DNA of 64,000 nt from Octopus sinensis (GCF_006345805.1 NC_042999.1:138694001-138758000); one strand, 5' to 3'; shown: positions 1 to 56,827, counted from the stretch's first letter. Numbers and translations are program-made. The notes: a model not told the origin generated them from the letters alone.

Positions 1-9
1 TAGAATTAT
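1..9 (-). CDS. Start of a further exon (D-N-S...) cut by the window edge
   Basis: Minus strand acttACTAACtcctgcttcagttaacatttctccAG|ataattcta: TACTAAC branch point, pyrimidine tract, CAG acceptor; open in phase 1. Confidence 0.5.
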
Positions 10-868
10 CTGGAGAAATGTTAACTGAAGCAGGAGTTAGTAAGTGGCGTGGCTTGATATTGACTGAAGTTTATAACTGAAAAGTATTAAGTGCTTAAGT
101 TCAATGAAGCATATCAGTGTGGTATAGTCTTGGCATATATGTTCTGGTATGATATAAAGTTATACATATGAATGCCTTTATTTTTAAATTGCAAGATGCT
201 TTCTGAGTATATTTTATAGTAAGTATGCAGTGTGGATATTCAGGGCACACAGAGGGAATATGCAATAGAGCTACCTCTACTGCATTATATAAGTGTTACA
301 TGAGTGATTTGGTGGTAGATAATATGGGTGTGTATGTAGATGCTAATAGTACTGTAGAATATGATACATGATATGAAGATGTTAGAAAAAATGAGGCGAA
401 AACTGAATGAGAGATAGCAAAAACAAAATATGGAACAAAGCTGAAAAGCACAAGCTTTTCCTCCACCTAAATATAACACGAAATAAATCTAAAAATTGTG
501 GAGGTAAATATGGAAAAGCAAAAGTATCACCATATTGATCTGATGGTCTTAAATGTAATAAATATCAAAATAAATCTTTTTAACAAACATTGTAAAGGAA
601 GGAAAAAATGAATTACAGATCTGGATTGTGTTGAAGTGTGTTAATACATCAACGTATCACAGATTTTCCAGTAATTTTCATTATAACCAGTACCAATCAA
701 TTATTCTTGTTGAGATCATAAACTTAACACCACCACCTGATCCTTAAATAGTAATAACGTATTATATGATCTTTGAGGACCTTTACAAGCACTTTTCCAG
801 CTAACACTGACCTTTAGATGCCCCCCATCATCATAGTGAATCTAGTGCAACATTAATCATCTTGATAC

Positions 869-889
869 CTTTCAGACATAGGGATAAAG
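869..889 (-). CDS. Candidate 21-nt phase-1 microexon (ALSLCLK)
   Basis: ggcattccAG|ctttatccctatgtctgaaag|GTatca; symmetric and stop-free, but splice sites only moderate. Confidence 0.25.
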
Positions 890-1036
890 CTGGAATGCCA
901 TAACTATGCATTGTTATGGATCTGATTAGTCAGGAATGACTTGGTACTAAACGATTTCACGCCAATCTCGTAACTATATTCAACATTAATGCACATTTTC
1001 ATCACCTCATAAAAACATTGCTTAGACATAGTATAA

Positions 1037-1348
1037 AAAAACGATAAACGTCACCCTTTTCAAGCCTAGCCAGGTTCATGGGCCTGGTTTCCCGGTTTCT
1101 GTGGCATATGTGTTCCCGCCAGCTGAATGGGACACCAGTCCATCGCAGCATTACTCAAGAAACAAGAAGAAAGAGAGAAAGTTGTGGCAAAAGAGTACAA
1201 CAAGGGTCGCCACCACCCCCTGCTAGAGCCTCGTGGAGCTTTTTAGGTGTTTTTGCTCAAGACACACACACAACACCCGGTCTGGGAATCGAAACCACGA
1301 TCCTCCAACCGTGAATCACCTCTAACTACTGGGCCATTGCACCTCCAC
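1037..1348 (-). mobile_element. tRNA-derived SINE, family B, tail type 1
   Basis: Minus-strand head ggtgcaatggcccagtagttag...gtttcgattccc (A/B-box-like); 14-bp TSD tagacatagtataa at 1023 and 1349; homologous to 47327-47641. Confidence 0.85.
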
Positions 1349-3521
1349 TAGACATAGTATAATCCACTATAATATGTCCACTATTACTATTTTTCTTCTA
1401 CCTCATTTCACATAGAACTACATTCTATGCATATAGCAGTGATAAACCACTTTATACACACACACACAGGAATACACCAGCATGGCTTCAGCCAAGATAG
1501 CGAAAACACTAAAGAACCAGAATATGCTTCTACATTAATATTACTATGCTTACCATCATAACTGTACCAACATTATACTCTTGTACATAGTGATGGTAAT
1601 AGTTGGTGTCTCAGCAAAACTTGACCTTTGTAGACTCCCACACTAATGTACTAATAATATTAAAATATAGAAAAGAAAGGGCAGGACAGAAAACATCAAG
1701 GCTGTAAATCTCTCTGATCATCATCTCCAGTTACATTAAAATTAATACGAGGTTGTGTGAAACAAACAGCAAAACTTTAGGTAAGAGTGATGGTAGGGGT
1801 AAAAGGGAAGAAGGCTATCAAATATATAATTCCATCATAACAGCAATTATAATATCTCATTCTGCACCATATATGTAAATAATCTGTAACAAAGGTATCA
1901 AAATATTTAATATTTTGGTATCTTAATATTTTTTGTTGACTAAACACAAAATTGTTTTTTGTGTGATACTTTTTATATTACTCGTCATATCTGTTTGAAT
2001 GTAAAAATAACATAACTGGGATTTGAAACAATGTGATACCAAGATAGGTGATATAATGTATTTAGGTGATATGCATAGATTATCTCCCTGCAAGTCCTCA
2101 AATGTGAAGGAGGGAAACCATCTAAGTTAACCCAAATGCTTGAAAGGTACTTTGTATTATTGACTCTGGGAGGATAATTGTAATCAATTGTGTTTTGGCT
2201 ATTACAAAGTTCAGAATTGTAGAACTGAGCAGCAGAAAATTGTGACATACACCTTTCCCAAAGATTAATGAAGTTGTTACAACCAGTAATGGAAATTACA
2301 CCTTTAAAGATATTCTCAATTGAGAAGTCTCAAATGAGATTGGAAATTCTGTTATAGAATCTATCAAATTTAGACGTATCTACAGCAACAGAGTTTGAGG
2401 TATTATGCAACAAATTTACATAATGTTCCATTTTGCCATATTCATTCCCTTCTCAAGGGAATGAATTTCAACCAAAAAGAAAATTGGATCAAAGGCTTTG
2501 CAAAAAAAAAATAAGTAATGATATTTCTTCCCAGTCACATGCACACACAATATGGAATATTACCAACATATCAGCTATTGCAATACAAACTTTCAAAGGC
2601 TGAGTGCAGAACTAGCTTAATATTTTTGCCATTGGAATATTGTGAACCAGAAATTGGCTTGTTAGAATCCTATAACCAACAACATTTAGTAACAAATTCA
2701 GGAGATACATTTTGCTTTAAAAAAAAAAAAAAAAAGGGAGAAATTAATTCTATGACTAGAATTAAGTAAAATATCTAAATTTCTGAAATCATTTTGTTCT
2801 AGTATAACAAGCAGAAGTGAGAAACGTTTATTAGTTAAACACAATGCTGGTTTTTGTGATGTACATATTTTTTTTGTACACCCCATTTTCAGTTAGAAAT
2901 CCTATTGCAGAAATTTAGCAGCATCATTGGCACTTTAATAAAGTAGCCAAAAGATAAAAGAACACAAAAACAACAAAACAAAAACAACAAAAAGGGGTGG
3001 GGAATAAATTACCTGTCAGCAGTGACAGGTTCAGAAGTTGGTATCAAATTATTAAAAGATAAACAGAAGCAATACACATGAAAAAAGAACTACACATTAT
3101 ATACACAACACACGCCATATATATGAGAAACATTGATGAAAGCAAGGAGGACCAAAGCAGAAAATACTATTTTTTTGAGATCAGAAAACAATGACACTGG
3201 AACAACAGACACAGCAAACACTACTTCTACTAGAGATAGATAGTAATGGGGGTTTGGATTGAGGATAGGGTAAGGAGAAAAGTCAAGAGGGGAAGAGGAA
3301 TAAAAATATTAAAGAATACCAAGAAACCAGAAGCAGTACAATAAATTGCTGTTTGACTTAGTGTGTGTGTATGAGTGCGCTTGTGTGTGTGTGCATGTGT
3401 AAAATGGTATTGTTTACTATTTGTTATTTTCGCTCCCATTCAGTCTCAAATACAGGGAGTAGATTGTATAAGAGGAAAAACACTAGCTTGTACTACTACT
3501 GCTGCTGCTACTACAAGATAC

Positions 3522-3617
3522 CTGAGACATCATCAGTAGGTTCAGCCGTAGGGGGACACCTTACAGGCTTTGGTGGTGGTGGCGGTGGTGGAGGTTTTTG
3601 TTTTAAGGGAGGAGGAA
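3522..3617 (-). CDS. 96-nt proline-rich exon VPPPLKQKPPPPPPPPKPVRCPPTAEPTDDVS
   Basis: ctttctcttttcttctttaccAG|ttcctcct...gtctcag|GTatct; phase 1/1 matches the upstream exons. Confidence 0.75.
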
Positions 3618-4074
3618 CTGGTAAAGAAGAAAAGAGAAAGAATGAGAATATACTGATCCCACCAGAAACTAAAGCATATATGTAAGACAAAAAACAAAAC
3701 AAAACAAAAACATCTAGACACCTGAGGTGTCGGTACAGTACAGTGGTGTTCTAGCATGAGCAATATGGTTATGTCCATGGCAAAAAAGAAAGAAAAGAAA
3801 TAAGAATTGAAAAAAATATAAAACAAAATAAAATATATAGTAAAAAGTGGATTATGGAGTTGAGGTACTGTGACATGGTAAAGTTTCCAGATTTAATGTC
3901 ATCTTATACTTGTGGTGTTTTTGCTGCAGTCATTGACCAGTAATTGTTCAGGCTCGGTATCAATTACATTAGACATCTGTGTATGATTTTGATTTTGATT
4001 TTTCCAGTTTCAGCTCATGAGCTGTGGCCATGCTGGGGCACCGCCATTTGGTTTGCTACATGATTTTACCTACT

Positions 4075-4285
4075 GCCATTTGGTGCATGAGAGTTCAATG
4101 CAGCTGCCCTCATCTGCACCTCCTGCCGTGAAGTTGGTTCATCCGGGACACCTGACAGGAAGAGATCCAGTCCTACTTTAAAGACATCCGCATCTACACC
4201 ATGCAGGTCCCTCAGGTTCTTCGGGAGGATATTGAAGAGCTGTGGGCCTCTGAAGCCCAGGCTATCACAGTATGTGCAAATTGGT
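4075..4285 (-). mobile_element. LINE (CR1/L2-like) ORF2 C-terminal fragment
   Basis: Translates TYCDSLGFRGPQLFNILPKNLRDLHGVDADVFKVGLDLFLSGVPDEP, resembling LINE ORF2 C-termini. Confidence 0.65.
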
Positions 4286-4857
4286 CATGGATTCTAACTA
4301 CCTATCTTCCTTTGACAAAATTATATTTTAAAAAGAAATAGAAGTGAGAGGAAAACTAAATCTCACCAGCTTAAATAAAAAAAAACAAACATTTTGGATA
4401 TCATTAAAAAGAATGGATGGTCAGGGTTAGAATTCTTTTGATCATAAGTCTGCTTAGTTAGGGCTGAAAATCTGGTGCAAAACACTTTGGATCAATAGAA
4501 ACAGAGAAATAGCTTTCTCAAGAACATTAGCAACCAAAGTGAAATAGTTGTCCCCATATTCAAAAGACGTGAAACTATTTCTACTTTATGCTTCTCACCA
4601 TGTAAAGAAGCTGAAATACTGAAATAAGAATATCCCCAGGCAATGTCTGCCTTAAGAGTAACATTTTCTGACAGAATTAGGTAGGCGGGAAACTAACAAA
4701 ATGAAATCCAGACAGTAGCAATTAACAAAAATTAAAAGAAAGAGCAAATATGATATAAATATGCCAAACCCTTACCCATTGAAACAAAGTGTATAATGCA
4801 GCTTAATATTGTGAGAGATTGGTAAATAGACACACACACACACACACACACACATGT

Positions 4858-5150
4858 AAGGGCACGTGCCCTAGTGATTAGGGTGTTGCACTCATGATTA
4901 CAAGATCGTGATGAGGATTCCTGGACTGGGCAATGCATTGTGTTCTTGAGCAAAACACTTCATTTGATGTTGCTCTGCAATCACTTCAGTATCTAACGTG
5001 TGGCACACCTTGTTCCAGTACAGTCAATACTGTTTTGGTGGAGGGAGGGAGCTAAAGTACAGTATAAACATTCAATCATTATAAGTCATCTGTGCAGGTT
5101 GTTCAGAAAGTAATTGTAGAGACCCTTAGCTGTCATTTATGATAGGAGAC
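4858..5150 (+). mobile_element. Degenerate tRNA-derived SINE, family D
   Basis: Head and the tgtgttcttgagcaaaacac segment are shared with 29316-29582 and 63055-63386. Confidence 0.6.
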
Positions 5151-5156
5151 TACACA

Positions 5157-5679
5157 TACCGTAAATCGAGTATAGTCTGCCCTTGAGTATAATACACAGG
5201 GGATTTTTAGGGTGCTGTACTTCTGAAAAACCTAAATCTTGTGTATAATCTGCACTCCTTCTCTAACTTGAGTCATATGTAATTAAGCCAGCAGCACCTA
5301 GTCGAACAAACACTTCCGCGCATGCGTAATACAATAATGGTGATATTCTTAACTGTTATATGGGAATGTAAATATGTTTGAAAATTGTTTTTGTTACATA
5401 TTATTCTGTGTTCTGAATACTTTTATTTTAATAAATGTTGCTTACTGCAAGTTATGGATGATTCTTTTATGACTTCATTGCTTTCAGGCTTAGCTTAAGG
5501 TATTTTCGCGCTCGACATCACAAAATGTGTCTGAATAAACATTGCCAGACAGCAAATAGAGAATCGGACATTGCTTAGAAAATATTTTTCATTTTTAACC
5601 TTGTATATAGTACGCACTAGGGATTTTGACCTTTAAATTTCAGGGAAAAAATGTGGATTATACTCGAGGATTTACGGTA
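5157..5679. mobile_element. Non-autonomous Tc/mariner-superfamily MITE (TA-CCGTA ends)
   Basis: TIRs taccgtaaatc(ct)cgagtata / tatactcgaggatttacggta; second copy at 61179-61691. Confidence 0.8.
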
Positions 5680-6564
5680 CACAGATTTAAAAATAAAAAT
5701 AGCAGGTTTTTGTTATTTGCAATGTAAAATAACTATAAGAATAATTAAAAATGATAAATAATAAATAAAACAAATAAAAAACAATAATGCAACAATAAAT
5801 AAAACTAAGATCAATTATAAAAACAATAATAACAATAAGAGCAGTAATAGCAAATATGTTCATTAAAGGTTAGACACTTCTAAAATTGCAGTGATATTTG
5901 ATTGAAATAAACTAAATTTAGTTCAAGTTACTAATCTGAGGCTTCTATCTACTGAATGGACAAAAAATAGTGAATGCATGAGAGAGAGAAAGAGAGAGAG
6001 AAGAAAAGAAAGAATGAAAGAAAAATTGTTAAAAATGCTTACTTTAGAATAAAAAAATATTTTAATCTTTTCTAAAAACAAATCCTATTTAGTATATTCC
6101 CTTAATTTTCTAAGCATTTCACTTAAATCATTACAAATTATATAACAATTTCAATATAAAATGTCCAAGAATAATATATATTTGTTAATCACATTCTGTT
6201 TTTGAAAAACATTCTAAACAAATACAGATTGCTCAAATTGAAGGTATAAAAAAACAAAGAAACAAGCATTAACCAAAAACAATACAAATGTCTGTGAAAA
6301 TAAGAGAAATCTTCACAAGTAAAGCAAAACATAAGCATGAAGTTTGATAAAACCCAACATGCAGGATTAAAAGTCGAGATGGACTTTGAATTAAACCTAG
6401 TTTCAATGGATTTTTACTTTGGGTGTTTGAAAAATTTGCTCAATTTATCATTACATAAGGACCAAAAGTATAAGGCAGCCAATTTACTTCAGGTCCTCTA
6501 GAATATGATACGTTAGGAAACAAATCACTGACAACCCTTCTACAACCCGCCGAATCAATGTTAA

Positions 6565-6624
6565 TCAATTGCAGAGAACACTTTCCAGAACATTTTTATT
6601 CTCTGCAACTGAGTAATATTGAAG
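6565..6624 (-). CDS. Candidate alternative terminal exon LQYYSVAENKNVLESVLCN*
   Basis: ctttcatatacattgtttacAG|cttcaatat...tga; phase 0 fits only the 6987-7027 candidate. Confidence 0.25.
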   Translation of the reverse strand, partial: LQYYSVAENKNVLESVLCN

Positions 6625-6986
6625 CTGTAAACAATGTATATGAAAGTAGTTGTAGAAAGTTTCCTACTGGTATAAAAGTAAAAAGATTTAAGCTATAACT
6701 CAGCATGTTGGGTGGGATTGGGGGTAGCGTATGCAACAAAATTGATCAGAGTTAACAATTGAAAGAAGAACTTGAAACAAAATGCAAACCAATAAAAGTT
6801 CTGGTAGATAAGCTGATCTATAAAGAAGAAACAATGGACTGTATTTTATCTGACATTAGAAAAACTAATAAATATGCATGCCCAAATAGATGTTCAACTG
6901 AATACAATACCAAATAGATGTTCCAATTGAATACAATACCACCAAATACTTAGCAAAACTCTAAAATATGTGATGGTACACCTTAC

Positions 6987-7027
6987 TTTCATAGACGTGT
7001 CTGTCACACACACTGCCTCAATATTGA
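6987..7027 (-). CDS. Candidate 41-nt exon VNIEAVCVTDTSMK (phase 1 to 0)
   Basis: aaattcctttccAG|tcaatattg...atgaaa|GTaagg; good sites and stop-free. Confidence 0.35.
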
Positions 7028-8375
7028 CTGGAAAGGAATTTGTCCCCAGTTTATAATTGTTATTCAAATTTAAATGCTACACATTTTATATGTATTTATA
7101 TTTTATTTTAAGCTGTTTTACAGACTAAATCACAATTAGTTTTTATCACATTTGTAATGAATAGTCAACAGAAAAGAACATTTCAGTAGATTCACTCTAA
7201 ACACTTTTTTGTAGATTAAGTCAATTGGGTCAATTCTCAAAACCTTAAAGAGTTAACAATGGATGCAGAAGCAAAGCAGGGTAGCAAATTGTAATTTGCA
7301 GCTAAGAGTATGAGATTATATTTAAAAATTCATTGCCACTGCACCTCGTTAAAAATAAAGCCAATATTTTTTTTTCCTTCTTCCTTCATGGCCTTTCAAC
7401 TTTTTATTAGAAACTAATTATTGAAGTAATATGAGAAGAAACAACTTGAAATATGGAATTTAGTTGCAAACAAAAACATTTCCCATGAAATTATTCCCAT
7501 AAAAATAAACAAGCAAAAACAAGTTACTACTTCCTTAAATCAGAACTTGAAATAACAAATGATTAATATTAGTCACTGGGATTATGTTTCCCTTCCTCAT
7601 TACAAAGGTAATTTTAATTGAAAGTTTTTGCTCATTTAAGTGTGTTAGTACTCACATATTCTGGAATGACCGGGTATTATTTTTTTTTAAAGGAAAAAGG
7701 AGATGGCAAACAGCTTCTCTACAAGATTTGCCATTTGTTTTAACTAGAAAAAACTATTTTTAGCTATGAGATTCCTTCCTTTAATTTTTTTATTAAAATT
7801 TTTTTTTTATATATATTGTTTGAGAAAAGTCTCTTTGTTGGAGGCTCAAAGTCTGCAGTTGTAACTTAGCAGTTTTAATCTTTCCTTATAAAGTATACTA
7901 TATAGTCCAGCAATGAGATCTCTTGACTGGACGTAAATTACACATTTGCCAATTGAAGGACACTGATTTCATATATATAACAATTTGAAACCAATTTTCT
8001 TCGTAAGTTAAGTACTTCAGTTCTTAATTTGTACACCAGCCAGCTATTGATTCTGAATGCAAATTGCACAACTTCTAAATGGATATTCAAGGTAACATTT
8101 TAAGACTCATCATTAATTAAATCCATTAGGAAGAATTAATGATTTTTATAATGGTGTTAATTCAAATGATATGAAACAAAATAGGCTTTAATAAAGACAC
8201 TTGACAAATTCAAAGGTCTAGCCTATCTAATTGAAAATTTAGACTGTAGAGACCACTGCTGTGGTCAAGAGTATGGCAACATTAACAAATGTTTGTTAAC
8301 TCAAAGTGCTGAGTTCAAATCCTCCTAAAAGAGCCTGAAAAATATCTTGGAAGCCATTATAATGAATCTTCACAA

Positions 8376-9282
8376 TATAAGCTGGTATCAAAAAGTTCCT
8401 GGACCAGTTCTGTAGTGTGCCAACAGATTGCAGCACATGGTTGTATATATAGCAGGAGCTAGCAGTGATCTTCTTCAGGCAGTGTGCCAAGTGACATCGC
8501 TGTGTTTACTTGTGAAACTCGTGTTCTTGTGATCATGTGTATGCTGTAGTCTGCAATTTTTGTCATGGACAGGAAGCTGGAGCAAAGAGCCAATGTGAAA
8601 TTTTGCATCTGACTTGGGAAGTCTGCTGTAGAGACATTGAGAATGCTTCAGAAACCTTACAGTGATGCAGCAATGGGTCATACATGATGTTTCAAGTGGC
8701 ATGGGCACTTCAGAAGCTGAAGAATGTCCCTGGAAGATAAGCAATCTGGAAGACCTACCATGAACATCACTCCTAGAAAATGTGGACAAAAGTCATCAGC
8801 TTGTGCCTGAGGATCATTGGAGGACAATCAATGATATTTTGAAGCATTTAAGGAAGGACATTTGGTGAAAGAATCTGAAGTGCAGAGAATTGGATTCAAG
8901 TGCAGAGAATTGGACAATGCACCCTGTCATCAAGCTCTCCTCACTTGTGAGTTTCTCATCTAAAACAACATGGTATCACTTCCACATCTGTCCTACTCAT
9001 CAGATTTATCACTTGTGAACCTCCATCTCTTCCTCATGATGAACCTGCAGCTCAAAAGTCAGTTTCAACACTGCTGTTGAGATCAAGAGTGAATCACAAA
9101 AGGTCCTTGATTTGCTTACCAACAACTTCTAGGTTGGATACTAAAAGTGGTAGGAATGCTGGGACTGGTAAAATTTTGTGCAAGGTGGCTATTTCAAAGG
9201 AAATGATGTTAAAATTTATGATTAATACAAAAATAAATTATTTACCCAACTAGTCCAGGAAACCTTTTGATATCACCTCGTA
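8376..9282 (+). mobile_element. Internally deleted, decayed mariner transposon
   Basis: TIRs ...tatcaaaaagttcctggac / gtccaggaaaccttttgatatcacctcgta. Remnants MDRKLEQRANVKFC..LGKSAVETLRML..., DNAPCH and HLSYSSDL, with stops and frameshifts. Confidence 0.85.
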
Positions 9283-9414
9283 AATATGGTTTACAGAAGT
9301 TAACTTTTACTAAAAACGAAAAAAAGAAAAAGACTTTGCATCAGTCAGTGGTTCTCGGTTTTTACCTATAGATGCCTTTGATTCTTATTGCTTTTGTGTG
9401 TACTCTCATAGCCA

Positions 9415-9665
9415 TTCATCATAATCGTTTAATGTCCGTTTTCCATGGTAGCATGGGTTGGACGGTTTGACGGGGGTCTGGGAAGCCAGGAGGCTGCACC
9501 AGGCTCGTCTGATCTGGCAGTGTTTCTACAGTTGGATGCCCTTCCTAATGCCAACCACTCTGAGTGTAGTAGGTGCCTTTTATGTGCCACCAGCATAGAA
9601 GCCAGTCAAGGCGGCGCTGGCATCGGCCATGTTCGGATGGTGCATTTTACATGCCACCAGCACCG
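9415..9665 (-). mobile_element. Retroposon 3' fragment (RTE-like tail)
   Basis: Minus strand ends ccatggaaaacggacattaaacga(tta)tgatga; same family as 30905-31124 on plus. Confidence 0.6.
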
Positions 9666-10018
9666 ATATCACAACTTCAATTTCCATTTGATTTTTTGAT
9701 GTGCTTGAAGAGATCCCATAGCCATTCAATATTTTAAAAAATCCTACTATATTCGTATAATTTTATTAGGAATTGTACACTAAAATTGTTAAAATATTGT
9801 GTATTGTTGAAGCATAACCAGTTTGTTGGACAAATTTTAAAGTCTCATATGGACCCCAATAGATCATATAAACCTTGGTTGAGAACCATTGATTGAAATC
9901 ATTTAATAACCCTCACCCACTACCAGTATACATTTAAGCAAGTTAAGACAGAACCTCTATAGATGGTAACTTGATTTGCTAGAAATAACAACCAAATCTC
10001 CCACCCACATTCTAAATA

Positions 10019-10394
10019 GGGAAGCACTCCGTCGGTTATGACAACGAGGGTTCCGGTTGATCCGAATCAACGGAACAGCCTGCTCGTGAAATTAACGTGT
10101 AAGTGGCTGAGCACTCCACAGACACGTATACCCTTAACGTAGTTCTCGGGGATATTCAGCGTGACACAGAGAGTGACAAGGCCGGCCCTTTGAAATACAG
10201 GTACAACAGAAACAGGAAGTAAGAGTGAGAGAAAGTTGTGGTGAAAGAGTACAGCAGGGATCACCACCATCCCCTGCTGGAGCATCGTGGAGCTTTAGGT
10301 GTTTTCGCTCAATAAACACAATGCCCGGTCTGGGAATCGAAACCGCGATCCTATGACCGCGAGTCTGCTGCCCTAACCACTGGGCCATTGTGCC
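10019..10394 (-). mobile_element. tRNA-derived SINE, family B, tail type 2
   Basis: Head aggcacaatggcccagtggttagggcagc...ggtttcgattccc; homologous to 20991-21305. Confidence 0.85.
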
Positions 10395-10864
10395 TAACAA
10401 ACGTAAATGAAAGATGGGATGGACACAACTGCAATGTTTTTGAACATAGGTCTACTGATCTATACAGAAATGGAACTAAACATTTATTCAAGAGTGTTTT
10501 TTTTTTTATTCCATTTCCTAACAACTCCATTCTTTGTATATACAATCATCACCTAACTACCGCTCCATTACCTTCTATGCTGGAAAAGCTATTTTAGCCT
10601 TAGGCTCCAAAATGTCACCACCACCCTGTTTCCAGCAAGGGTAGGTGAGTCTACTATTATTCCATTCAGCCAAACAGCAGCAGCTTTTCAGAGATTGGAG
10701 CATAGTTCCTTTAATGGTAAAAGTTAGAAACGATAGAAGGGGAGTGGTGTGAAGAATTCTCTGCGGTTGTGAGGTGATGTATCAGTTTGCAGTAGACAAC
10801 CATACATTCATTCACTCACTTAACATGGAGCCACCTGGCCTGCTAGTATATTTCTAATTGTTTG

Positions 10865-11270
10865 ATAGGGAGAAGAAGAGAGAACAAATAAATGAAAGAG
10901 AGAGAGAAGGAAAACAAATGAGAGAAAGAGAGTGGAAACAAACAAGGGGGAATAAGAGAAAGCAAATTGGGGGAAATAAGAGACAGCGAATGTGGGAAAT
11001 AAGAGAAAGTGAATAGAGGGGGAATAAAAGAAAGAATAGTGGGGGAGAATAAAAGAAAGAGAATAGGGGGAACTAAGGGAGGGAGAGGGTAGATAAGCAA
11101 CAGAGAGAGAGGGGGGCAAGTGATAAAGAAAGCAGTTGGTGGGGAGGGGGACAAGAGGCAGAAAGCCTAGAGAAAGAGTAAAGAATGAAATGGGTAAATA
11201 CAAAACCTGGTTGGGAGATGGGGGAGTGGGGAAAGATGAGAGATAAGAAAAAGATAAGAGGCTAAAATAA
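10865..11270. repeat. Low-complexity purine-rich tract (polypyrimidine on the transcribed strand)
   Basis: About 400 nt of gaga/gaaa/ggga units. Confidence 0.7.
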
Positions 11271-11553
11271 ATTCATGATGAAAATGCCTTTTGTAACTCA
11301 TTGCAGGATTTTAATACAATATAAACTACTGAATAATGTTTTATATATCTATGAAGTGATGCACACACATATTCATATAATAGGTAGTTGTGATGTTCAT
11401 ACATTTTCTCATTGGCTTTAATGAAATAAGAAATTCAATTAGCTTTGGGTTAATAATATCAAAAAATGAGAGTTTAATCAGTTATTTTTAGCATAATGGC
11501 TATCAAGCTGGTGTGGAAGGAGTAGAGGGAGAGGGAGAAAGAGGGAGGGGAGG

Positions 11554-11591
<38 letters not shown>

Positions 11592-14500
11592 AGAAAGAGA
11601 AAGAGAGAGAGTAGATAACGCATGGGACTCCTGTCTACTGCTTTATGAATTCTGCCAGTCCAACAATGAGGGCAAAATTGGCCTCAGCAGAATTTTAGGA
11701 TCTATTCAGTTTGGCTGCCAGCATCAATTCTGTTTGAATTGATTTCATATTCAGTGTAATGATGCACTTTTATAGGCTAATGAATGGTGAGGAAATCATT
11801 TTTGCTTTAAATCAATAAAGAGTTATTAGCAATTAAAATTTGAAAATTTTGACTAATTTTAGCCAATCTTAAGCCACAGACACTTTCATGCCTGTTTCCA
11901 TAGTAACAAGCAGAACATGAGAACTCTTTTGTCTGCAAGAAAGCATGTGTTGACAAATATATTGAAACTACTTGTTTTACCTATCTGTTGACAACTGAAC
12001 ATGTGAATTTATGAACTAGTCAACAAAATGTTTAGGTTTTAAAAATATTCAGTTTGTAATATGCTATTTTGTTTTTAGATAAATCTTTTAAGTTCATGCT
12101 GCCACAATGCTTAAAACTACATAAGACATGTTTACTCTTCCTTGACAACATGTGCTATTTTTAGGATGTTGACAAAATGTGCAGTCATGTACAAAATGAC
12201 AGCTTCCAAATCCTGTTTCTTGACTGGGAGAAAATGATCCAACTTTAACCCTCTAACATTAAAAAAAAAAAAGCATTTTTCGAGAAAAGTGAAATAACTC
12301 CAGCAATTCAGCTTTGAAAAGTATATTAATGTGCCAAGTTAAAAATTTTTCAATAAGTTTTAATTTTTGAAATGCTGGCAACCAACCCAAATAGATCTAA
12401 ATTTGACTTCACAATGAAAAAAAACAAAAAAAGAACCATCAAACATTTTGACCAATACTCTAATAGCTGTCAGTTTACTACCTCTATAGAGCACAATTGA
12501 TCTATATCAACTTTGGTACTTATGGTATTTATTTTATCGATGTTGAAAGGATGAAAAGTAAATTTCACTTAGGCAGGATTTGAACACAGAAAATAATACC
12601 TTACTAGGGCAATAGCAATTGGTACTCTGGATCAGAGTTGCTTACTATCCTGAAGCAGTAATAATGCTATTAGCATATAATCTGTAGTCTTTTCACCACC
12701 ATTTGACTTGTTACTGTTGCTTTCTTTGAGTAGTGTATCAATGAAATGATTATAATATACAGCACTAATCAACTTGACAATGGAGACAAACTTTGGATGT
12801 GAAGCAGTCACTTTTTGACTGGATACCTATCACAAGTACTTTATTACAGTTAAAATACCTGGCTCTTAATGATAGACTATGACATATTGAATGTTAGTAC
12901 AATATGAGGGAACTGCTACATAGTTGTTTGACCAGGTAGGAACAGGAGCCAAATTGTAATCAAATTGCTGCCATCTTCAGAATGAACATTGGATAATGTA
13001 GTCTTGGAACAAAGGAGCGGTTATGGCTGGAATCTCTTTTTGTCAGTTCTGCTTGATGTATACTGAACAACTGGGTATTTGGTCACTATCCCACCTTTCA
13101 CAAACTGCTTCATTTCAGCACCTTTCTTGGACAGATACACCTCTGTTCATTGCCTTTTTCTAGAATTATTTTTATAACTTTGCAGCCCTACAGCTTGTTG
13201 GATCCTGTCAAACTGTACAACCCATACCAGCAGTGAATTGATGGTAAATGATAAGTAGTTCCAAAATGTGCCAGAAAAGGTATCTAGGTATGTGGTGAAA
13301 TTTCTAAAAATATAATTTAAGAGTTTAGCAAATCAATACTAATGTTTGGGCATCCTTAAAAACATGTTATAATTTTGTTATACACAAGTATGATTAATAA
13401 AACTAAGTATGGGTTATTACTTCTTTCAGAGCTTGTAAAAGAAGTGGAAGGAAGTTTCTTCAGATTTGGCTCAAATGTTTGAGTCAACTCTACTCAAGGT
13501 AGTCAAGGGCCAGATGGTGATATTAAAAACTGACAGCAATTTAATTGAGCCATCAATTTCTTTATCTTTGCTGCTGTCATTTGCTTGTAATTGACTATTA
13601 TGGAAAGCATCTTTCCAATTTCCGTGCAGTTCTTATATTTCCTATCCAACATTGTTCACATGAATGAATACTAAAGTCTTCTATCCTAGCTTAAATAGTA
13701 TAGTATTAAAGTCAGTACCTTTTCAGTAAATATAGTTCTAGCTTTATAAAATTTCAACAACTGTTTAGTACAAGGCAGTAAGCTGGCAGAACTTAACATG
13801 CCAGACAAAATGGTATTTCATCTGTCTATGTTCTGAGTGAATTTTGCCAATGTCAACTTTGCCTTTCCTTTTGGGGTTGATAAAGCAAGTAGGAGTTGAG
13901 CACTGGGAGGTGATGTTATCGACTAGCCACCACCTCCAAAACTTAAAGGCCTTGTGCCTATTGTATAGAGGCTAATAACAGATAAAAGAATCCAAGTTAG
14001 GCAAAATGGTATTAATGTCAAGTTAGAATCGAACCTATAATTTGTTAATGTATATCTACATAACCATTATTTTTTTAACTAATCAATTTATCTTAGAAAC
14101 ATTGTATATTTTTGTTCTCTATCTTCCTTTCATATAGGCATACCCCCTACCAACAACACTGCTATTTGCTGTTCACTGTTCTACATTCACAAAAGGTAGA
14201 TGCCATTGAAAAGTAGAACATCTAGCAGTATATAACCTGGTGTTATACCTGCCTAATATTGATGCTCAAAAGTTTCATATTACACTGTGTGAATATATAT
14301 ATGTGCACATTAAATAATGCTGTATTTATTAACATCCAAATATTTTCATTAAAAAAAAAAATTCAGTTTTAAATAAAGTGAAACAAACACACACACACAC
14401 ACACTGCAGTGTGCACTTTGATAGTTAGCGATTATCAACAGTACTGCACACATATGAAAACAATTAGGATAAAAAACATATTCCATCCCACCAAATATGT

Positions 14501-14744
14501 GTATATACACATCTCCAGAGTGTGCAATATACTAAATTAGCAAAAGGCATCAAAATTTTAAGATACAAGATTTTTTAAAAATGTCAAAAACCAATCAAAA
14601 TAGAAAAATGCCTCCTACAAAAGCAAAAAACAAATAGGGAGGAAAGCAGGATTGAAAGAAGGTGGACAGCAGGAGGAAAGTAGCCACCCCTACTACACTA
14701 CTATAATTTCATATTTATAGGGTGTATGTTGTCAGTGATAATAC

Positions 14745-14804
14745 CTTGTCCAACATACTGGTCAGCACCAATGTGAGAGTCTGCATCATAATATGTATTT
14801 GTAT
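14745..14804 (-). CDS. 60-nt symmetric exon DTNTYYDADSHIGADQYVGQ
   Basis: tttcctccattttctccAG|atacaaat...ggacaag|GTatta; phase 1/1 and stop-free. Confidence 0.7.
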
Positions 14805-16906: not shown

Positions 16907-16940
<34 letters not shown>

Positions 16941-17260
16941 CTAAGCCCAATATATGCCAATTGGCTCCATTCCAAATAAACAATTATGTTATATTCAGTA
17001 AACAATGATGAAGCACAAGGTATGAGAAATTTGAAGTAGAGATTGAATAAACAATTATGTAACACACATGTTGATTATTGTATATGTGTGTGTGCGCACA
17101 TGCACACACATACACTTCCTACTAACCTATCAGCAGAATACACAACTTATATTAAAACTAATAGGTTACGATTTTTAAGCAACTTAAGTACATACTTTGT
17201 TTGAAAATATATAAATATTGAAAGATAAAATTAGGAGACATCTTGAGCGTATGTTCAATG

Positions 17261-18926
<1,666 letters not shown>

Positions 18927-21603: not shown

Positions 21604-21634
<31 letters not shown>

Positions 21635-43184: not shown

Positions 43185-43285
43185 CTGATAGTTCTTGGTG
43201 TTTTGGGTCCCTTAGTAGAATCCCGAAAAATAGGTCGTGGTAAAGGTGGCAAAGTAACAAAAGGGTGAGCCTCATTTCTCATCAT
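43185..43285 (-). CDS. Alternative first coding exon MMRNEAHPFVTLPPLPRPIFRDSTKGPKTPRTI(R)
   Basis: In-frame TAA two codons upstream of the ATG, no acceptor seen, 101 nt ending atcag|GTattt in phase 2, in frame with 28476 and 28149. Confidence 0.65.
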
Positions 43286-44384: not shown

Positions 44385-44420
44385 CTAGAGGATGGGGGCG
44401 CGGAATCAGAATTGTTTGTG
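44385..44420 (-). CDS. 36-nt cassette exon (N)TNNSDSAPPSS(R)
   Basis: ttttatttcttccgttcacatatttcttcAG|cacaaac...ctctag|GTaaga; strong sites, phase 2/2, stop-free. Confidence 0.75.
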
Positions 44421-51806: not shown

Positions 51807-52200
51807 GGCACAGGAGTGGCTATGTGGTAAGTAGCTTGCTAACCAACCACATGGTTCCGGGTTCAGTCCCACTGCGTGGCATCTTGGGCAAGTGTCTTCT
51901 GCTATAGCCCCGGGCCGACCAATGCCTTGTGAGTGGATTTGGTAGACGGAAACTGAAAGAAGCCTGTCGTATATATATATATAAGTGTGTGTGTATATGT
52001 TTGTGTGTCTGTGTTTGTCCCCCTAGTATTGCTTGACAACCGATGCTGGTGTGTTTACGTCCCCGTCACTTAGCGGTTCGGCAAAAGAGACCGATAGAAT
52101 AAGTACTGGGCTTACAAAGAATAAGTCCCGGGGTCTATTTGCTCGACTAAAGGCGGTGCTCCAGCATGGCCGCAGTCAAATGACTGAAACAAGTAAAAGA
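51807..52200 (+). mobile_element. tRNA-derived SINE, family C, full length
   Basis: gtggctatgtggtaag A-box-like, gggttcagtccc B-box-like, internal (TA)/(GT) stretch. Confidence 0.8.
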
Positions 52201-55200
52201 AAAAAGAAAGAAAAAGAATAAAAGCTGCCTAAACTAATACCTCTAAGACCATTATGACTCTAACAATAAGGTCACAGATGAGTAGGCAAGTAGAAAGGAA
52301 AATGTGTGGTGGAATGTGCCGAACAACTTAAAATAAATAAAGCTGTGCTGCCTGGAGTAAGAAAACAACCGAGGAAACCTTGTGACAGTACGGCTTGATT
52401 CCTGAAACGCATTCTATTTTTCAATCATGAATACTGAAGTTGGTGTGCCTGATCTACAATCTTTACATCTGTAACTGAAAGTAGAATGACTGATTCCGGT
52501 GTTAAGATATTTCAAAGGGACTAATTCAATGATACAGTCTGTCTATGCTTCTGCTTATTTTAGCACTGTCATGTATTTTACGAAAATCTATTGGTTGTTT
52601 ATACCCTAGGATTTACAACAATAGGAGACACGAATGTAACCCATCATTTCTTTGTAGAGGAGCTAAGATTTACGATGTAAATATTAAAAAAGGCTGAGAA
52701 ACAGCTGGATATATAAGAGCAAATTTCTATATTCACGATAAGGGAAGTGAGTGGCAGGAACAGTAGGATGATGGATTAAATGCTTCGCAGTAATAAGTTA
52801 ATCCTAGGCCTCTGGAAAATTAGACTCAAACCCAAATCTATCCATTTGCAAAAAAAAAAAATAATAAATAAATAAAATAGAAAAACAAATATCCCCAAAC
52901 ACCATTTGGCTCACTGATCGATGAAAACAATATTCTTCCCAGGCATGCCATATAATAATAGTGAAGATTCTATAGAAACTGTACTTCTCTGTCTTCGGAC
53001 AACCACGACATTCGGATAATTTTAGCCAAAAAAGAAAAAAACTCCCTATTGGAGTGAGGTATGATGTTCCAAAAGATGACTTAACAGATTACTCTAGATG
53101 GTGATATTAAGTTAAGAATGGCCTGGGCTATTACTGTCCGAAACATAAATATGTTAACTAAGTTATCCTCTTATGTCCTAAGTTCAATCCCATATAAGTC
53201 TACGCTATCTGAGATAATTTCAGAGTCGATAAAATTAAATACTAATCTAGTACTGGTGTGGATTCAATCGACTGTACCTATCCTTAAAATTTGTGGACAT
53301 GTGCCAATACAAGAATCATTATAATAATTACCTTGCAAAATGAAATAGTTATATAAATTCCTGAAATACCACAGATCTGCATTTACGATTCAGATAAAAT
53401 TAGATGTGTAATTAATAGTTAATGTGGAATTAAGAAAACAATTAATGATATATATATTTACGAAGTTGCAGTATCAAAAATATTTCCTAAACTTTTCTGC
53501 TTTATAAAGCCGAACTATAAATGTTCTCTTCTGAACAATTCTGGAAACTGTATTTTTTTTTCCAATCAAACTCTCCTACTAAACACTTAAGTATAATTTC
53601 GAAAAATTTTAACATTTTGTAACGTGTACCTTTAGACGCTATAGTTCTGGGGAATAATATTCGGATCTCAGTATGTGTCAGTTCTTGCTTGTAGACGTTA
53701 CATATTTTTGGCCTTGGGGAATGATGCACTTCACATATTTTCTTTTCTTCTTCCAAAACAACAACTGAGATTTCATGTCTATATGTATATTTATACACTT
53801 CTATATGTATTTTCAACGGACCGTTAAAAGAAAACTGCCATCCTTTAACATGATAGTCGTAAGACAAAATATAATGCACAAAATCAAGCCAATAAGACGA
53901 CCTTTTTGTCATCATTCAAATTGCTAAGAACAGCAGCTAAACCTCTCTCAAATCACATCCTCACAGTCAAAAAGACATACAAGATAATGTAGCCCTAACT
54001 ACATTGTTCTATGGAAAAAAAATTCCGATTGTCGCCGCAGGGACATCTTTGATTATGGGGCTGATCTGGTGCTATACATCACTAACATATCATACAACAT
54101 TAATTTATCGATATATCGCAGAATTAAAATATGTTGAGGCAACTGTATAGACACAACATTTTCTCATGTTAGAAAGAGGGAGGGTGTATATTTTTTATAT
54201 AGAAAAGTTATGCATTTCAAATGCAAAGATAGGACATCGTCCAATCAGATTGAAGTAATGTGAGTTAATTAACTGTTGAGACACTGCAAAATGATTGAAA
54301 AAATACTATATTAACACATGGTCAAAGATCTTAACATTGCATATTTTGTACTTAAATCCTAAACGTGAATGTTATAAGAGGAAACAAAACGGATGTAAAA
54401 AAATAAGATGATAAAAATCGTTGATACGTGCCGAAAGGTACAGAGCAGCAAGGGAAAAGAAGTAGGATATTCAGATCAAACAAACTGCTTAGTCAAGACT
54501 CTCATGATAATTGTTATTTAGCTCTAGGTCAGCCATAACTGAACAAAGATATTCCAGCAGTAACTATCCCGTCTTATAAGACATAATTTATTTCAGATCA
54601 CATTACACACGTCTGCCATTTTTTAAAGGATGATAGCAATTTGAGAGATTTGGTGGCTATTTTTAGCAGATCGAACAATCGTGTTGAAGCTGCTTCGTTG
54701 ACTTGTTGTGATTGTTAATTTCTGGTTGTAAACGCCTAAAGCTTATAGTTTTCTTTTCCAGGAATATTTACAAAGTTCCCACGAAAGATTTTTTGATAAA
54801 GTACATTTTCACACGAACCGACTGTTTCACATTAAAATTTAGAAGGAAGTGTTTAGGAAATAACTACAATTATATTGACAAATATTTTTGATACAATAAG
54901 ACATAGAAGCTTAAATGTACCAAACGTCACTATAACACTTATATACTCCTTCAAATATTAATTTAACATTAAGTTAATAAATACAAATTTTACTTCAATG
55001 ACAATATAATATACAAAAATTCAAAACCAACTCTTTGAGAGTATTTTATACATGTAGAGGTGCGTTGAAAACTCATAGATAAATTAATATCGCAATGAAA
55101 CATTTGCAGACATTGAAGGAATTTGCTTTTAGAATGTGGGATGAAATTTCAGCAAGGCTGAAGTTACAGCTGATTAAATGGTTAGAGCATCGACGTACAA

Positions 55201-56651
55201 AACGGTTCAATGATCCGTATAGTTCGCTGAACTCCTCGCTAAAACACTCCCTTGCTCCCCAACTAGAGAATATTGTTTACACATAGAAATTTGATACTCA
55301 CTAATGTATTGCCTTCGTATTATAATATCTACAATCAGTAACAGAATTTGATTTTGGAGGGGAAGGCATTTTCTTCTTTCGCGGATTTCATAAAGGTGGG
55401 ATTTTATATAGTTGATTAAATCTAATCTACAAGTATTCATACTTGTTTTATCAACCCCCAGAAATGCAATAAGTAAAGGTGGTCTTGAAGCCGACTAAAT
55501 ACTTGCCAGAAATAAGTCGATTAACTCAATCCTGAATTTTTGTGTTCATAATCTTGTTGGGAGCCACTGTTATTTTACTTTACTCGGATTATATTAGTGT
55601 TAGTGAAGGTCGAATCAACTAACTACATAGTGTTTTCTTTTGACAAAATGATCATTTGTCAATTTGTGGATGACGTGAAATTTCTGATTGTTGAGTAGGA
55701 CATTCACACGACATTTACGATATTACACCACGCCTGTGTATGGTGTAATATAGTGTTGAACTGTAAGCACAGCAGCCATTACACGTAGTCTAGACCAAAA
55801 GATTGACTGAGATGATTTTGGGCTTTAAGTTGAGACTGGATATTAGAAGAGATTTCATTACCTTCTTCATACCTACAAGAGGCTTTCACTTTATCACTGC
55901 TCTGCAAACTTACGAAAATCTTGTTAATTATACAGAAATCCTGATATTCTCATCTGAGCTGTACTAAGTCATAGCATCAATTTCTATCCAGAGAGATTGA
56001 AGCAATGAAACTGAAATGGTTTATCGATGGGCATAGTGCAGTGCGTTTAATTTCCCCTTATCAACGACCTATAATATGCTCTATTGCAAAAATGAAATCA
56101 AATCCTTCACCACCGAGTGCTAATTAGAAGAAAACACTTCACAGTGGGATCAACTTCATCATCACCACAACAATCATTATCATCATGATCATCACTGTCA
56201 CTATGATGCAAAGCATCCATAGAACTACCAAAAGAAATAAATTATCAAAAAATTTATCAGATTTTAAAATATTTGCACACACACGCACATACACCCATGC
56301 ATACAGCTACAAGTACACACGCGCACGCGCACACACATACGCACACACACACACACTTGCATACAAACAAATAAACACATAGACTGCAATGATCTTTTGA
56401 AGATATTGTGAGCCAGACTTTCTTATCGTAATGAAGTTATTTTAATTGGTGTTATGGCGGAGGAGAGAAGAGTGTTAGAAAAAGAAAATAAAAAGAACAA
56501 GAAATTTCAATAGCATCAAAACAAACGTGAATCAAGAATGACAACAGCAACACCAGCACCACGGAGAAACATTTCAGTAAAACCGACATCTTGTTTTCCA
56601 TTGTACTACATTACATTTCAACAATAGCATTAGATAATCAGTCCCACTTAC

Positions 56652-56827
56652 TTTCTTTTCTCTGCAAGTTCTTTCAGGTCGATTCCACTAGGAATATACG
56701 CAAATGGCTTTTGATCTTTGTTCTTCAACATGGTGTTTAACAAAGCGCCCGGAACTTTCCCACTGCTTTCCTGGTCAGATGTACCATTACCATACTGATT
56801 CATCGAATTCTGGCCATGATCAGGCGC
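56652..56827 (-). CDS. Upstream exon APDHGQNSMNQYG...KDQKPFAYIPSGIDLKELAEKR(K)
   Basis: ttattatatctttatAG|gcgcct...agaaa|GTaagt; 176-nt open frame ending in phase 2, in frame with 44420 and 28149. Confidence 0.8.

What the first reader, a model, noticed from the sequence alone, without database searches (positions are those of the whole stretch)
1..56827. Phase-locked modular exon system in a Zasp/PDLIM-like gene: alternative N-termini plus small cassette exons
Seen: the well-supported exons upstream of the ZM exon end in phase 2 (56652, 44385, 43185, 28459), and those downstream of exon 19164 are phase 1/1 (14745, 3522; candidate 869). Each can therefore be skipped independently. Established: Drosophila Zasp52 and vertebrate LDB3/ZASP are heavily alternatively spliced Z-disc alpha-actinin binders. 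Inference: this locus builds many isoforms around a fixed ZM core, probably by tissue; most of these exons are too small for ORF-based annotation.
Basis: partly seen in the sequence, partly recalled or inferred. Interest (0 to 1): 0.7.

Follow-up and report, generated by a model that had tools for sequence, protein, structure and literature searches.

The report
Octopus Zasp-like gene: modular cassette exons
The window holds the middle of an octopus muscle-scaffold gene (Zasp-like but without LIM domains) whose exons keep one reading-frame phase upstream and another downstream, so they can be skipped independently; this is real and evolutionarily old, but it is already in public annotation and is an ordinary design for alternatively spliced genes.

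Summary
Six of the nine listed exons have independent support. E56, the alternative first exon E43, the ZM exon and E19 match Octopus bimaculoides isoforms, decapod transcripts or distant orthologues. E14 (60 nt) and E3 (96 nt) are cassettes that six O. bimaculoides isoforms either include or skip.

E44 and E28a have good splice signals but appear in none of nine cephalopod models. E869 is at chance level.

The phase pattern extends further than claimed. All four junctions from E56/E43 to E19 are phase 2. All seven introns from E19 to the last exon (in an O. vulgaris locus) are phase 1. The bivalve Ruditapes orthologue has 12 inclusion patterns of five cassettes around a constant PDZ/ZM core.

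The gene is not a PDLIM. About 35 orthologues have PDZ + ZM (DUF4749), repeated IPSxSFxxLQ motifs and a [ST][DE]F C-terminus, but no LIM domain. The closest known analogue is Drosophila Zasp66. Tissue specificity was not testable. Verdict: a real feature of a known kind, and a new member of it.

The parts
56652..56827 (-). E56: 176-nt internal coding exon, phase 0 to 2. It encodes the conserved motif ...VPGALLNTMLKNKDQKPFAYIPSGIDLKELAEKRK.
   Evidence: tblastn hits from 23 orthologues. Decapod transcript P0113 reads ...AEKRK|QHYNQ, so the exon is spliced directly to the ZM exon. Acceptor and donor are conserved in decapod genomic contig L005 and similarity collapses in the introns.
44385..44420 (-). 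E44: candidate 36-nt cassette, phase 2/2 (TNNSDSAPPSS). Unconfirmed.
   Evidence: AG/GT and an open frame. Splice score sum 6.7, as good as confirmed exons, with about 0.15-0.5 chance equivalents expected. Absent from all nine cephalopod isoforms and transcripts and from all orthologues.
43185..43285 (-). E43: coding part of an alternative first exon (MMRNEAHPFVTLPPLPRPIFRDSTKGPKTPRTI), ending in phase 2. The 5' end of the exon (UTR) is unknown.
   Evidence: It is the N-terminus of six O. bimaculoides isoforms, 31/33 identical, spliced straight to the ZM exon. An in-frame stop lies two codons upstream of the ATG and no usable acceptor is present.
28459..28476 (-). E28a: candidate 18-nt micro-exon, phase 2/2. 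Unconfirmed.
   Evidence: Strong donor (8.4) and weak acceptor (-0.9), with about 0.2-0.4 chance equivalents expected. Absent from every isoform. One non-synonymous difference from O. vulgaris, which is uninformative.
27793..28149 (-). ZM exon: 357 nt, phase 2/2. It holds the Zasp-like motif GQYNSPLGLYSAEAA.
   Evidence: Pfam DUF4749 E=1.9e-14. 89% identical to P0004 with in-frame Q-run indels. 29 orthologues hit it.
25940..25981 (-). E25: 42-nt exon, phase 2/2 (DMKISGGPKYDPC).
   Evidence: 13/13 identical in all six O. bimaculoides isoforms, with a relative in both decapod transcripts. In Mytilus and Ruditapes a cassette at this same ZM|E19 junction is alternatively included. Skipping has not been observed in cephalopods.
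19164..19390 (-). E19: 227-nt exon and the only asymmetric one (phase 2 to 1). It encodes SEVFKLINENE...KQSLSFKVLQWMTDTE.
   Evidence: 92% identical to P0004. 73.5% DNA identity to a distant cephalopod contig, with conservation stopping at both splice sites. 37 orthologues hit it.
14745..14804 (-). E14: 60-nt cassette exon, phase 1/1 (DTNTYYDADSHIGADQYVGQ).
   Evidence: Included in P0024, P0026, P0109, P0110 and O. vulgaris P0108. Skipped in P0004 and P0025. 18/20 identical.
3522..3617 (-). E3: 96-nt proline-rich cassette exon, phase 1/1 (VPPPLKQKPPPPPPPPKPVRCPPTAEPTDDVS).
   Evidence: Included in O. bimaculoides P0109 and P0110 (31/32 identical, one in-frame Pro indel) and skipped in the other four isoforms. 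Identical in O. vulgaris L004.
869..889 (-). E869: candidate 21-nt exon, phase 1/1. Probably not an exon.
   Evidence: Both splice sites are poor (sum -2.1), with 20-50 equal-or-better chance candidates expected. Absent from all isoforms; E3 joins exon A directly in P0109 and P0110.

Best explanation
What it is: the window (minus strand) covers the central, disordered-linker part of an octopod gene. The window is about 97% identical to O. vulgaris chromosome OX597816.1. The gene encodes a LIM-less Zasp-like scaffold protein.

Protein layout (from orthologues): an N-terminal Zasp-type PDZ; a long disordered region; the 'LNTMLK..KPFAY..DL' motif (E56); the ZM motif; 'SFKVLQWMTDTE' (E19); three or four 'IPSxSFxxLQ' repeats; and a [ST][DE]F C-terminus. 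The PDZ lies upstream of the window and the repeats lie downstream of it.

How isoforms are made:
(i) Alternative 5' exons (E43, and the E56-containing long form) all splice to the phase-2 acceptor of the ZM exon.
(ii) Symmetric cassette exons are skipped or included. From E56/E43 to E19 every junction is phase 2. E19 shifts the phase. From E19 to the last exon every intron is phase 1. Any internal exon except E19 can therefore be omitted without a frameshift.

Shown: the exon identities, the phases, inclusion and skipping of E14 and E3 (and of a further downstream cassette) in annotated isoforms of sister species, and the same modular logic in bivalves.

Inferred: the phase-1 block arose by tandem duplication of a 1-1 exon encoding the SFxxLQ motif. 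Splicing tunes the number and spacing of short helical binding motifs and the presence of the PDZ. The protein acts at Z-disc-like structures, possibly as a LIM-less 'blocking'-type partner of LIM-bearing Zasp proteins, as Zasp66 does in Drosophila.
For: - Pfam DUF4749 on ZM+E19.
- The exhaustive search found O. bimaculoides A0A0L8GUQ2 at 93% identity.
- Six O. bimaculoides isoforms, one O. vulgaris model and two decapod transcripts map onto E56, E43, ZM, E25, E19, E14 and E3.
- In-silico splicing keeps the frame in all combinations.
- Downstream exons A-E are all phase 1 in O. vulgaris L004 and decapod L003, and the junction codons behave as required (G|TG=V, A|TG=M).
- Mytilus isoforms differ by a cassette exactly at the ZM|E19 junction.
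- Ruditapes: 12 patterns of five cassettes, with an A/S junction switch (G|CN vs T|CN) that only phase 1 allows.
- No LIM in any family member, whereas true Zasp/LDB3 hits do carry PF00412.
- Exons B and C are 50-56% identical, consistent with duplication.
- AlphaFold: confident PDZ, disorder elsewhere, short helices at the E56 and SFxxLQ motifs.
- Literature: Zasp66 is PDZ+ZM without LIM, has at least 13 transcripts with alternative starts, and six of them are ZM-only (PMC3591300). LIM-less forms act as blocking isoforms through ZM-LIM binding (PMC6910826).
Against: - No RNA-seq or long-read data could be consulted. The isoform evidence comes from database gene models (UniProt/NCBI) and two Logan transcript contigs, mostly from other species.
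- E44, E28a and E869 have no support.
- Skipping of E25 has never been seen in a cephalopod.
- The PDZ-containing long isoform is inferred for this species from E56 conservation and from an O. vulgaris 749-aa upstream gene model whose sequence I could not read.
- Z-disc function and tissue specificity are untested.
- Gastropod orthologues lack the ZM core, so ZM-dependent function is not universal in the family.
Confidence: 0.85

Rival explanations
1. Selection artefact. The 'phase-locked' pattern exists only because the reader picked, among thousands of AG...GT open segments, those that fit the required phase. On this view the small exons are not real.
For: The window holds 9358 symmetric open AG...GT segments of 15-60 nt. 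About 480 phase-2/2 segments of 15-40 nt lie between E56 and ZM. E869 is indistinguishable from chance. E44 and E28a appear in no isoform.
Against: E14 and E3, the two larger cassettes, and E56, E43, ZM and E19 are independently confirmed by proteins from other species.
Confidence: 0.1
2. A canonical PDLIM/Zasp52/LDB3 orthologue, whose PDZ and LIM exons simply lie outside the window.
For: A ZM motif/DUF4749 is present. Some annotators named orthologues 'PDZ and LIM domain protein'.
Against: No LIM (PF00412 or a Cys/His pattern) in about 35 orthologues, including full-length bivalve and gastropod proteins. The ORF ends at a conserved [ST][DE]F stop in exon E. True Zasp and LDB3 hits score far lower and do carry LIM.
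Confidence: 0.04
3. The isoform diversity is an annotation artefact. On this view the models are computational combinations, and only one or two mRNAs exist in vivo.
For: All isoform evidence is from gene models, and I saw no reads. The O. vulgaris annotation of this very gene is visibly broken, split by a 1-bp assembly deletion in E19.
Against: The same cassette positions vary independently in annotations from different pipelines and phyla-level lineages: UniProt O. bimaculoides, and NCBI Gnomon for Ruditapes, Mercenaria, Mytilus, Biomphalaria and Patella. Two assembled decapod transcripts differ in their N-terminus. O. vulgaris includes E14 whereas two O. bimaculoides models skip it.
Confidence: 0.08

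Closest known systems
Drosophila Zasp66 (and Zasp67), the LIM-less Alp/Enigma relatives
   Same: Zasp-type PDZ (PWGFRLxGG) plus a Zasp-like motif and no LIM domains. Many transcripts (at least 13), alternative start sites, and isoforms that keep the ZM but lack the PDZ (PMC3591300). These parallel the E43-start, ZM-containing, PDZ-less octopus isoforms.
   Different: Zasp66 and Zasp67 are described as insect-specific (PMC6910826, citing Gonzalez-Morales 2019). This family occurs in molluscs, an annelid and a centipede. It also carries extra conserved elements: the KPF[AS]Y motif, SFKVLQWMTDTE, three or four IPSxSFxxLQ repeats, and a [ST][DE]F C-terminus. Orthology to Zasp66 was not tested, and function in octopus is unknown.
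Drosophila Zasp52 and vertebrate LDB3/ZASP/Cypher (Alp/Enigma, PDLIM family)
   Same: A ZM motif within DUF4749. Heavy alternative splicing of disordered-linker exons. Isoforms lacking individual domains. The PDZ binds alpha-actinin at Z-discs (PMC3591300, PMC6910826, PMC13521563).
   Different: Those proteins have one to four C-terminal LIM domains. This family has none in any orthologue, so by the ZM-LIM model it could only be recruited and could not recruit others.
Symmetric-phase cassette exon arrays in modular or disordered proteins (general principle: exons of class 1-1 or 2-2 can be skipped or duplicated without a frameshift)
   Same: All confirmed internal exons except E19 are symmetric, and inclusion or skipping preserves the frame. 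The repeat-encoding exons B and C look like tandem duplicates.
   Different: Nothing in principle. The only particular feature is the clean two-block layout (phase 2, then phase 1) joined by one asymmetric exon, which is conserved from bivalves to cephalopods.

Membership tests
Alp/Enigma (PDLIM) family sensu stricto | Zasp-like motif (ZM; SMART SM00735 / Pfam PF15936 DUF4749) | tested here: met
   ZM+E19 translation hits PF15936 at E=1.9e-14, 54.7 bits against a cutoff of 28.7. P0004 scores 65.7 bits.
Alp/Enigma (PDLIM) family sensu stricto | N-terminal Zasp-type PDZ with PWGFRLxGG | tested here: inconclusive
   Not in the window. Present in the long orthologues from bivalves, gastropods and an annelid. 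For this species it is implied only by E56 conservation and by an unread 749-aa upstream model in O. vulgaris.
Alp/Enigma (PDLIM) family sensu stricto | One or more C-terminal LIM domains (PF00412) | tested here: not met
   No LIM in the window. None in about 35 orthologues by Pfam or by Cys/His pattern, and the ORF ends ...[ST][DE]F. The control hits P0057 and P0059 do carry PF00412.
Zasp66-type LIM-less Zasp relatives | PDZ + ZM, no LIM, many transcripts with alternative starts, including ZM-only forms | tested here: met
   The architecture is met at family level. E43-start isoforms keep the ZM without the PDZ. The definition is taken from PMC3591300.
Zasp66-type LIM-less Zasp relatives | Orthology to Drosophila Zasp66/67 | not tested
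The literature calls Zasp66/67 insect-specific (PMC6910826), which argues against orthology.
Frame-preserving cassette exon | Length divisible by 3 with the same phase on both sides, and both inclusion and skipping observed | tested here: met
   E14 (60 nt) and E3 (96 nt) are included in some O. bimaculoides isoforms and skipped in others. For E25 (42 nt) only inclusion is seen in cephalopods, but its positional counterpart is alternative in Mytilus and Ruditapes. E44, E28a and E869 show neither inclusion nor skipping.
Alternative first exon / internal promoter | An ATG-containing exon that cannot be read through from upstream and is spliced to a shared downstream acceptor | tested here: met
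   E43 has an in-frame stop two codons before the ATG and no acceptor. It is joined to the ZM exon in six isoforms. Promoter activity itself is not testable here.

The most novel reading that the evidence does not exclude
This gene represents an ancient, so far undescribed LIM-less PDZ-ZM lineage. It is present in molluscs, annelids and at least one myriapod, and so it predates and is independent of the 'insect-specific' Zasp66/67. Its long disordered tail carries an array of short helical IPSxSFxxLQ motifs, each encoded by its own phase-1-1 exon. On this reading, combinatorial exon skipping sets the valency of the scaffold, and the alternative promoter at E43 removes the alpha-actinin-binding PDZ. 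Together these would form a splicing-programmed 'growing/blocking' switch for Z-disc-like structures in lophotrochozoan muscle.
Probability: 0.25. Interest if true: 0.5.

Novelty: new member of a known kind. Interest (0 to 1): 0.3.

Why it matters
For annotation, the practical value is this. The window gives an intact copy of a gene that is split in two in the O. vulgaris reference annotation by a 1-bp deletion in E19. It also fixes the coordinates of seven real exons, four of them 100 nt or shorter.

Biologically, it documents that a LIM-less Zasp-like gene with combinatorial cassette splicing is shared by cephalopods and bivalves. Its orthologues are mislabelled in NCBI as osa-like, SETD1A-like, YLP-motif-like and so on. 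The literature treats LIM-less Zasp genes as an insect peculiarity.

The splicing design itself (symmetric exons, alternative first exons) is textbook, and the isoforms are already in public databases, so the surprise for a specialist is modest.

Tried and rejected
1. Word-indexed protein searches with ZM+E19 and with the joined minor exons found almost nothing. That was a sensitivity failure of the index, not absence. The exhaustive search and a profile search then found the orthologues. On that basis I had provisionally called E3 unsupported. This was wrong and was corrected when cluster members P0109 and P0110 were read.

2. PDZ and LIM exons were sought in the window by tblastn with remembered LDB3, ALP and Zasp52 sequences and by motif regexes. 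None were found.

3. The N-terminus of decapod transcript P0031 (MSSYAPHFPG...) was sought in the window and not found.

4. E3 and E869 counterparts were sought in the 10 kb upstream of exon A in decapod contig L003. None were found, and the 'LKQTPPPP' hit was a chance match next to a microsatellite. This is a weak test, because the species is distant and the intron sizes are unknown.

5. Comparison with O. vulgaris L004 at about 97% identity has no power to discriminate the micro-exons.

6. Genomic loci for O. bimaculoides P0004 and Ruditapes P0030 were not on record.

7. Hypothesis that the [ST][DE]F tail docks into the protein's own PDZ: AlphaFold of the Patella orthologue with a 22-sequence alignment left the tail at pLDDT 31-38 with no strand. 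This gives no support, but the test is weak.

8. Rfam and tRNA scans of the window found nothing.


Full report
**What is in the window.**
The window is AT-rich eukaryotic DNA (GC about 0.29-0.45) with large microsatellites and no long ORFs apart from repeat-derived ones.

| Exon | Coordinates | Length | Phase |
|---|---|---|---|
| E56 | 56827..56652 | 176 nt | 0 to 2 |
| E44 | 44420..44385 | 36 nt | 2/2 |
| E43 | ATG at 43285, ends 43185 | 101 nt coding | ends in 2 |
| E28a | 28476..28459 | 18 nt | 2/2 |
| ZM | 28149..27793 | 357 nt | 2/2 |
| E19 | 19390..19164 | 227 nt | 2 to 1 |
| E14 | 14804..14745 | 60 nt | 1/1 |
| E3 | 3617..3522 | 96 nt | 1/1 |
| E869 | 889..869 | 21 nt | 1/1 |

The joined ZM+E19 translation hits Pfam DUF4749, the ZM region of Alp/Enigma proteins, at E=1.9e-14. 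No PDZ or LIM exon lies in the window.

**Is the pattern more than chance?**
Sequence alone cannot carry the micro-exons. The window holds 9358 symmetric open AG...GT segments of 15-60 nt. About 480 phase-2/2 segments of 15-40 nt lie between E56 and the ZM exon.

I scored splice sites with a crude consensus matrix, so these figures are rough. E44 (sum 6.7) and E28a (7.5) score as well as confirmed exons, and 0.15-0.5 chance equivalents are expected in the right phase in that interval. E869 (-2.1) is at chance level, with 20-50 equal-or-better candidates expected. External evidence was therefore essential.

**External evidence for the exons.**
- *Finding the orthologues.* Two word-indexed searches were nearly empty. 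The exhaustive representative search then found a 474-aa protein at 93% identity. It is UniProt A0A0L8GUQ2, 'Zasp-like motif domain-containing protein', from Octopus bimaculoides. A profile search and cluster look-ups added five more O. bimaculoides isoforms, O. vulgaris CAI9720125.1, two assembled decapod transcripts, and about 35 orthologues from bivalves, gastropods, an annelid and a centipede.
- *Mapping onto the window.* tblastn of 59 proteins against the window hits E56 (23 queries), E43 (4), ZM (29), a new exon at 25981..25940 (5), E19 (37) and E14 (2), and nothing else.
- *N-terminus and core.* All six O. bimaculoides isoforms start with E43 (31/33 identical) spliced to the ZM exon, and all contain the 42-nt exon E25 (13/13 identical) and E19.
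- *Cassettes.* Four isoforms include E14 (18/20 identical) and two skip it. Two include E3 (31/32 identical, one in-frame Pro indel) and four skip it. A further 48-residue cassette outside the window is independently present or absent.
- *E56.* Decapod transcript P0113 reads ...KPFAYIPSGIDLKEIAEKRK|QHYNQ..., which is E56 joined directly to the ZM exon. E56's acceptor and donor are conserved in a decapod genomic contig.
- *E19.* It is 73.5% identical at the DNA level to a distant cephalopod contig, and similarity stops exactly at both splice sites.
- *Unsupported exons.* E44, E28a and E869 occur in none of the nine cephalopod models and in no orthologue.

**The phase architecture is real and larger than reported.**
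- *The comparison locus.* O. vulgaris locus L004 (OX597816.1) is colinear with window 31116..1 at about 97% identity. Window coordinate 1 falls about 3.8 kb short of the next exon.
- *Downstream phases.* In L004 the downstream exons A, B, C (the 48-residue cassette), D and E are all bounded by phase-1 introns. The junction codons change exactly as the isoforms require (G|TG=V when C is skipped, A|TG=M when it is included). The same phases hold in decapod contig L003.
- *Overall layout.* Upstream junctions E56|ZM, E43|ZM, ZM|E25 and E25|E19 are phase 2. E19 is the single asymmetric exon. All seven introns after it are phase 1.
- *Statistics.* With typical metazoan phase frequencies (roughly 0.47/0.30/0.23, general knowledge), three phase-2 introns followed by seven phase-1 introns is very unlikely by chance.
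- *Caveats.* Equal phase among alternative first exons that share one acceptor is a logical necessity. Symmetric cassettes are what selection for frame preservation produces.
- *Origin.* Exons B and C are 50-56% identical, which suggests the phase-1 block grew by tandem exon duplication.

**Conservation of the modular logic.**
- *Mytilus.* Isoforms X3 and X5 differ only by a 24-residue cassette inserted exactly between '...VTAVSG' and 'MPDKP...', the ZM|E19 junction where the octopus has E25.
- *Ruditapes.* Thirteen isoform sequences read (annotated X1-X16) resolve into 12 patterns of five independent cassettes. PDZ, the E56 motif, ZM and the first part of E19 are constant.
- *Phase in the bivalve.* The residue before 'SRTIS' is A after two upstream exons and S after a third (G|CN vs T|CN). 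Only a phase-1 split codon allows this.
- *Other species.* Mercenaria, Argopecten, Biomphalaria and Patella also have 4-7 annotated isoforms.

**What the gene is.**
- *Not a PDLIM.* No family member has a LIM domain by Pfam or by Cys/His pattern. True Zasp and LDB3 proteins, which appear as weak hits, do have one.
- *Architecture.* A Zasp-type PDZ (PWGFRLQGG); a long disordered region ending in poly-Pro; 'LNTMLK..KPF[AS]Y..DL'; the ZM motif; 'SEVYK'; 'SFKVLQWMT[DE]TE'; 'EDDEMRFSG..IPSKAF'; two or three further 'RYxGxxIPSxSFxxLQ' units; and a conserved [ST][DE]F C-terminus.
- *Structure prediction.* AlphaFold of the Patella orthologue gives a confident PDZ, disorder elsewhere, and short helices of intermediate confidence at the E56 and SFxxLQ motifs.
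- *ZM in gastropods.* All eight gastropod orthologue models lack the ZM core.
- *Closest described analogue.* Drosophila Zasp66 has PDZ + ZM and no LIM. It has at least 13 transcripts with alternative starts, and six of them are ZM-only (PMC3591300). In flies, LIM-less forms act as 'blocking isoforms' that terminate ZM-LIM-driven Z-disc growth, and Zasp66/67 are described as insect-specific (PMC6910826). A review of the family mentions no molluscan member.

**Mechanism.**
*Shown:* alternative 5' exons converge on one phase-2 acceptor, and symmetric cassettes are included or skipped with the frame preserved.
*Inferred:* splicing tunes the number and spacing of short helical motifs and the presence of the PDZ, and the protein works at Z-disc-like structures. 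Tissue specificity could not be tested. Nor could promoter activity at E43, skipping of E25 in cephalopods, or the three unsupported micro-exons.

**Verdict.**
The modular isoform system and the alternative N-termini hold, but the gene is LIM-less, E56 is an internal exon, and 'by tissue' is untested.
- The feature is real and evolutionarily old. It is already present in public gene models and follows a well-known design, so it rates as a new member of a known kind with modest interest.

Noticed in passing
It is present in all six O. bimaculoides isoforms and, in diverged form, in two decapod transcripts. Bivalves have an alternatively spliced cassette at the same junction.
   Followed up: yes
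L004 about 9880 (O. vulgaris OX597816.1), corresponding to window E19 about 19330: The O. vulgaris assembly GCA_951406725.2 has a 1-bp deletion inside E19 (GCTTA-CAATG vs GCTTATCAATG in the window). This frameshifts the exon and coincides with the annotation splitting the gene into a 749-aa model and a 228-aa model (CAI9720125.1). It is probably an assembly error.
   Followed up: partly
window 17262-18926 and 21551-23651: Very large (AGAC)n/(AG)n microsatellite arrays in the E19-E14 and E25-E19 introns produce the longest 'ORFs' in the window. These introns are about 1-2 kb longer than in O. vulgaris L004.
   Followed up: partly
window 45430-45744: A 63-bp unit repeated five times (92% matches), open on both strands, in the E56-E44 intron. 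Its nature is unknown.
   Followed up: no
window 47342-47641 and about 1000-1300; window 9716-9828: Interspersed repeat copies. The 47.3-47.6 kb segment is about 89% identical to the O. vulgaris counterpart of window about 1.0-1.3 kb. The segment at 9716-9828 is 76% identical, inverted, to a stretch of decapod contig L003.
   Followed up: no
orthologues (P0007, P0027, P0030, P0035, P0041, P0048 and cluster members): NCBI names for this family are misleading and inconsistent: 'trithorax group protein osa-like', 'YLP motif-containing protein 1-like', 'SETD1A-like', 'proteoglycan 4', 'formin-like protein 16', 'PDZ and LIM domain protein 5'. This is presumably driven by low-complexity matches, and the family seems unrecognised as such.
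   Followed up: partly
C-termini of orthologues (outside the window; last exon at L004 about 46780-46902): A conserved C-terminal [ST]-[DE]-F in molluscs and an annelid resembles a class-I PDZ ligand. AlphaFold of the Patella orthologue gave no sign that the tail docks into the protein's own PDZ (tail pLDDT 31-38).
   Followed up: partly
gastropod orthologues P0032-P0040, P0048: All eight gastropod orthologue models lack the ZM core (YNxP[ILMV]) while keeping the PDZ, the KPFSY motif, SFKVLQWMTETE and the IPSxSFxxLQ repeats. In that region they carry repeated 'PAGxVQSDY' units.
   Followed up: partly
L004 34064-34183 and 38893-39036 (downstream of the window): Exons B and C, both phase 1/1 and each encoding an 'IRYxGKxIPSPxFxVLx' unit, are 50-56% identical. 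This suggests a tandem exon duplication, and C is the alternatively included copy.
   Followed up: partly
decapod transcript P0031 (Logan): A third kind of N-terminus (MSSYAPHFPGTHYPNMEQQQPQLYFPLPPQPQALVPGSDRSFIERARRER) is joined to the ZM exon at the same junction. No counterpart could be found in the window.
   Followed up: partly
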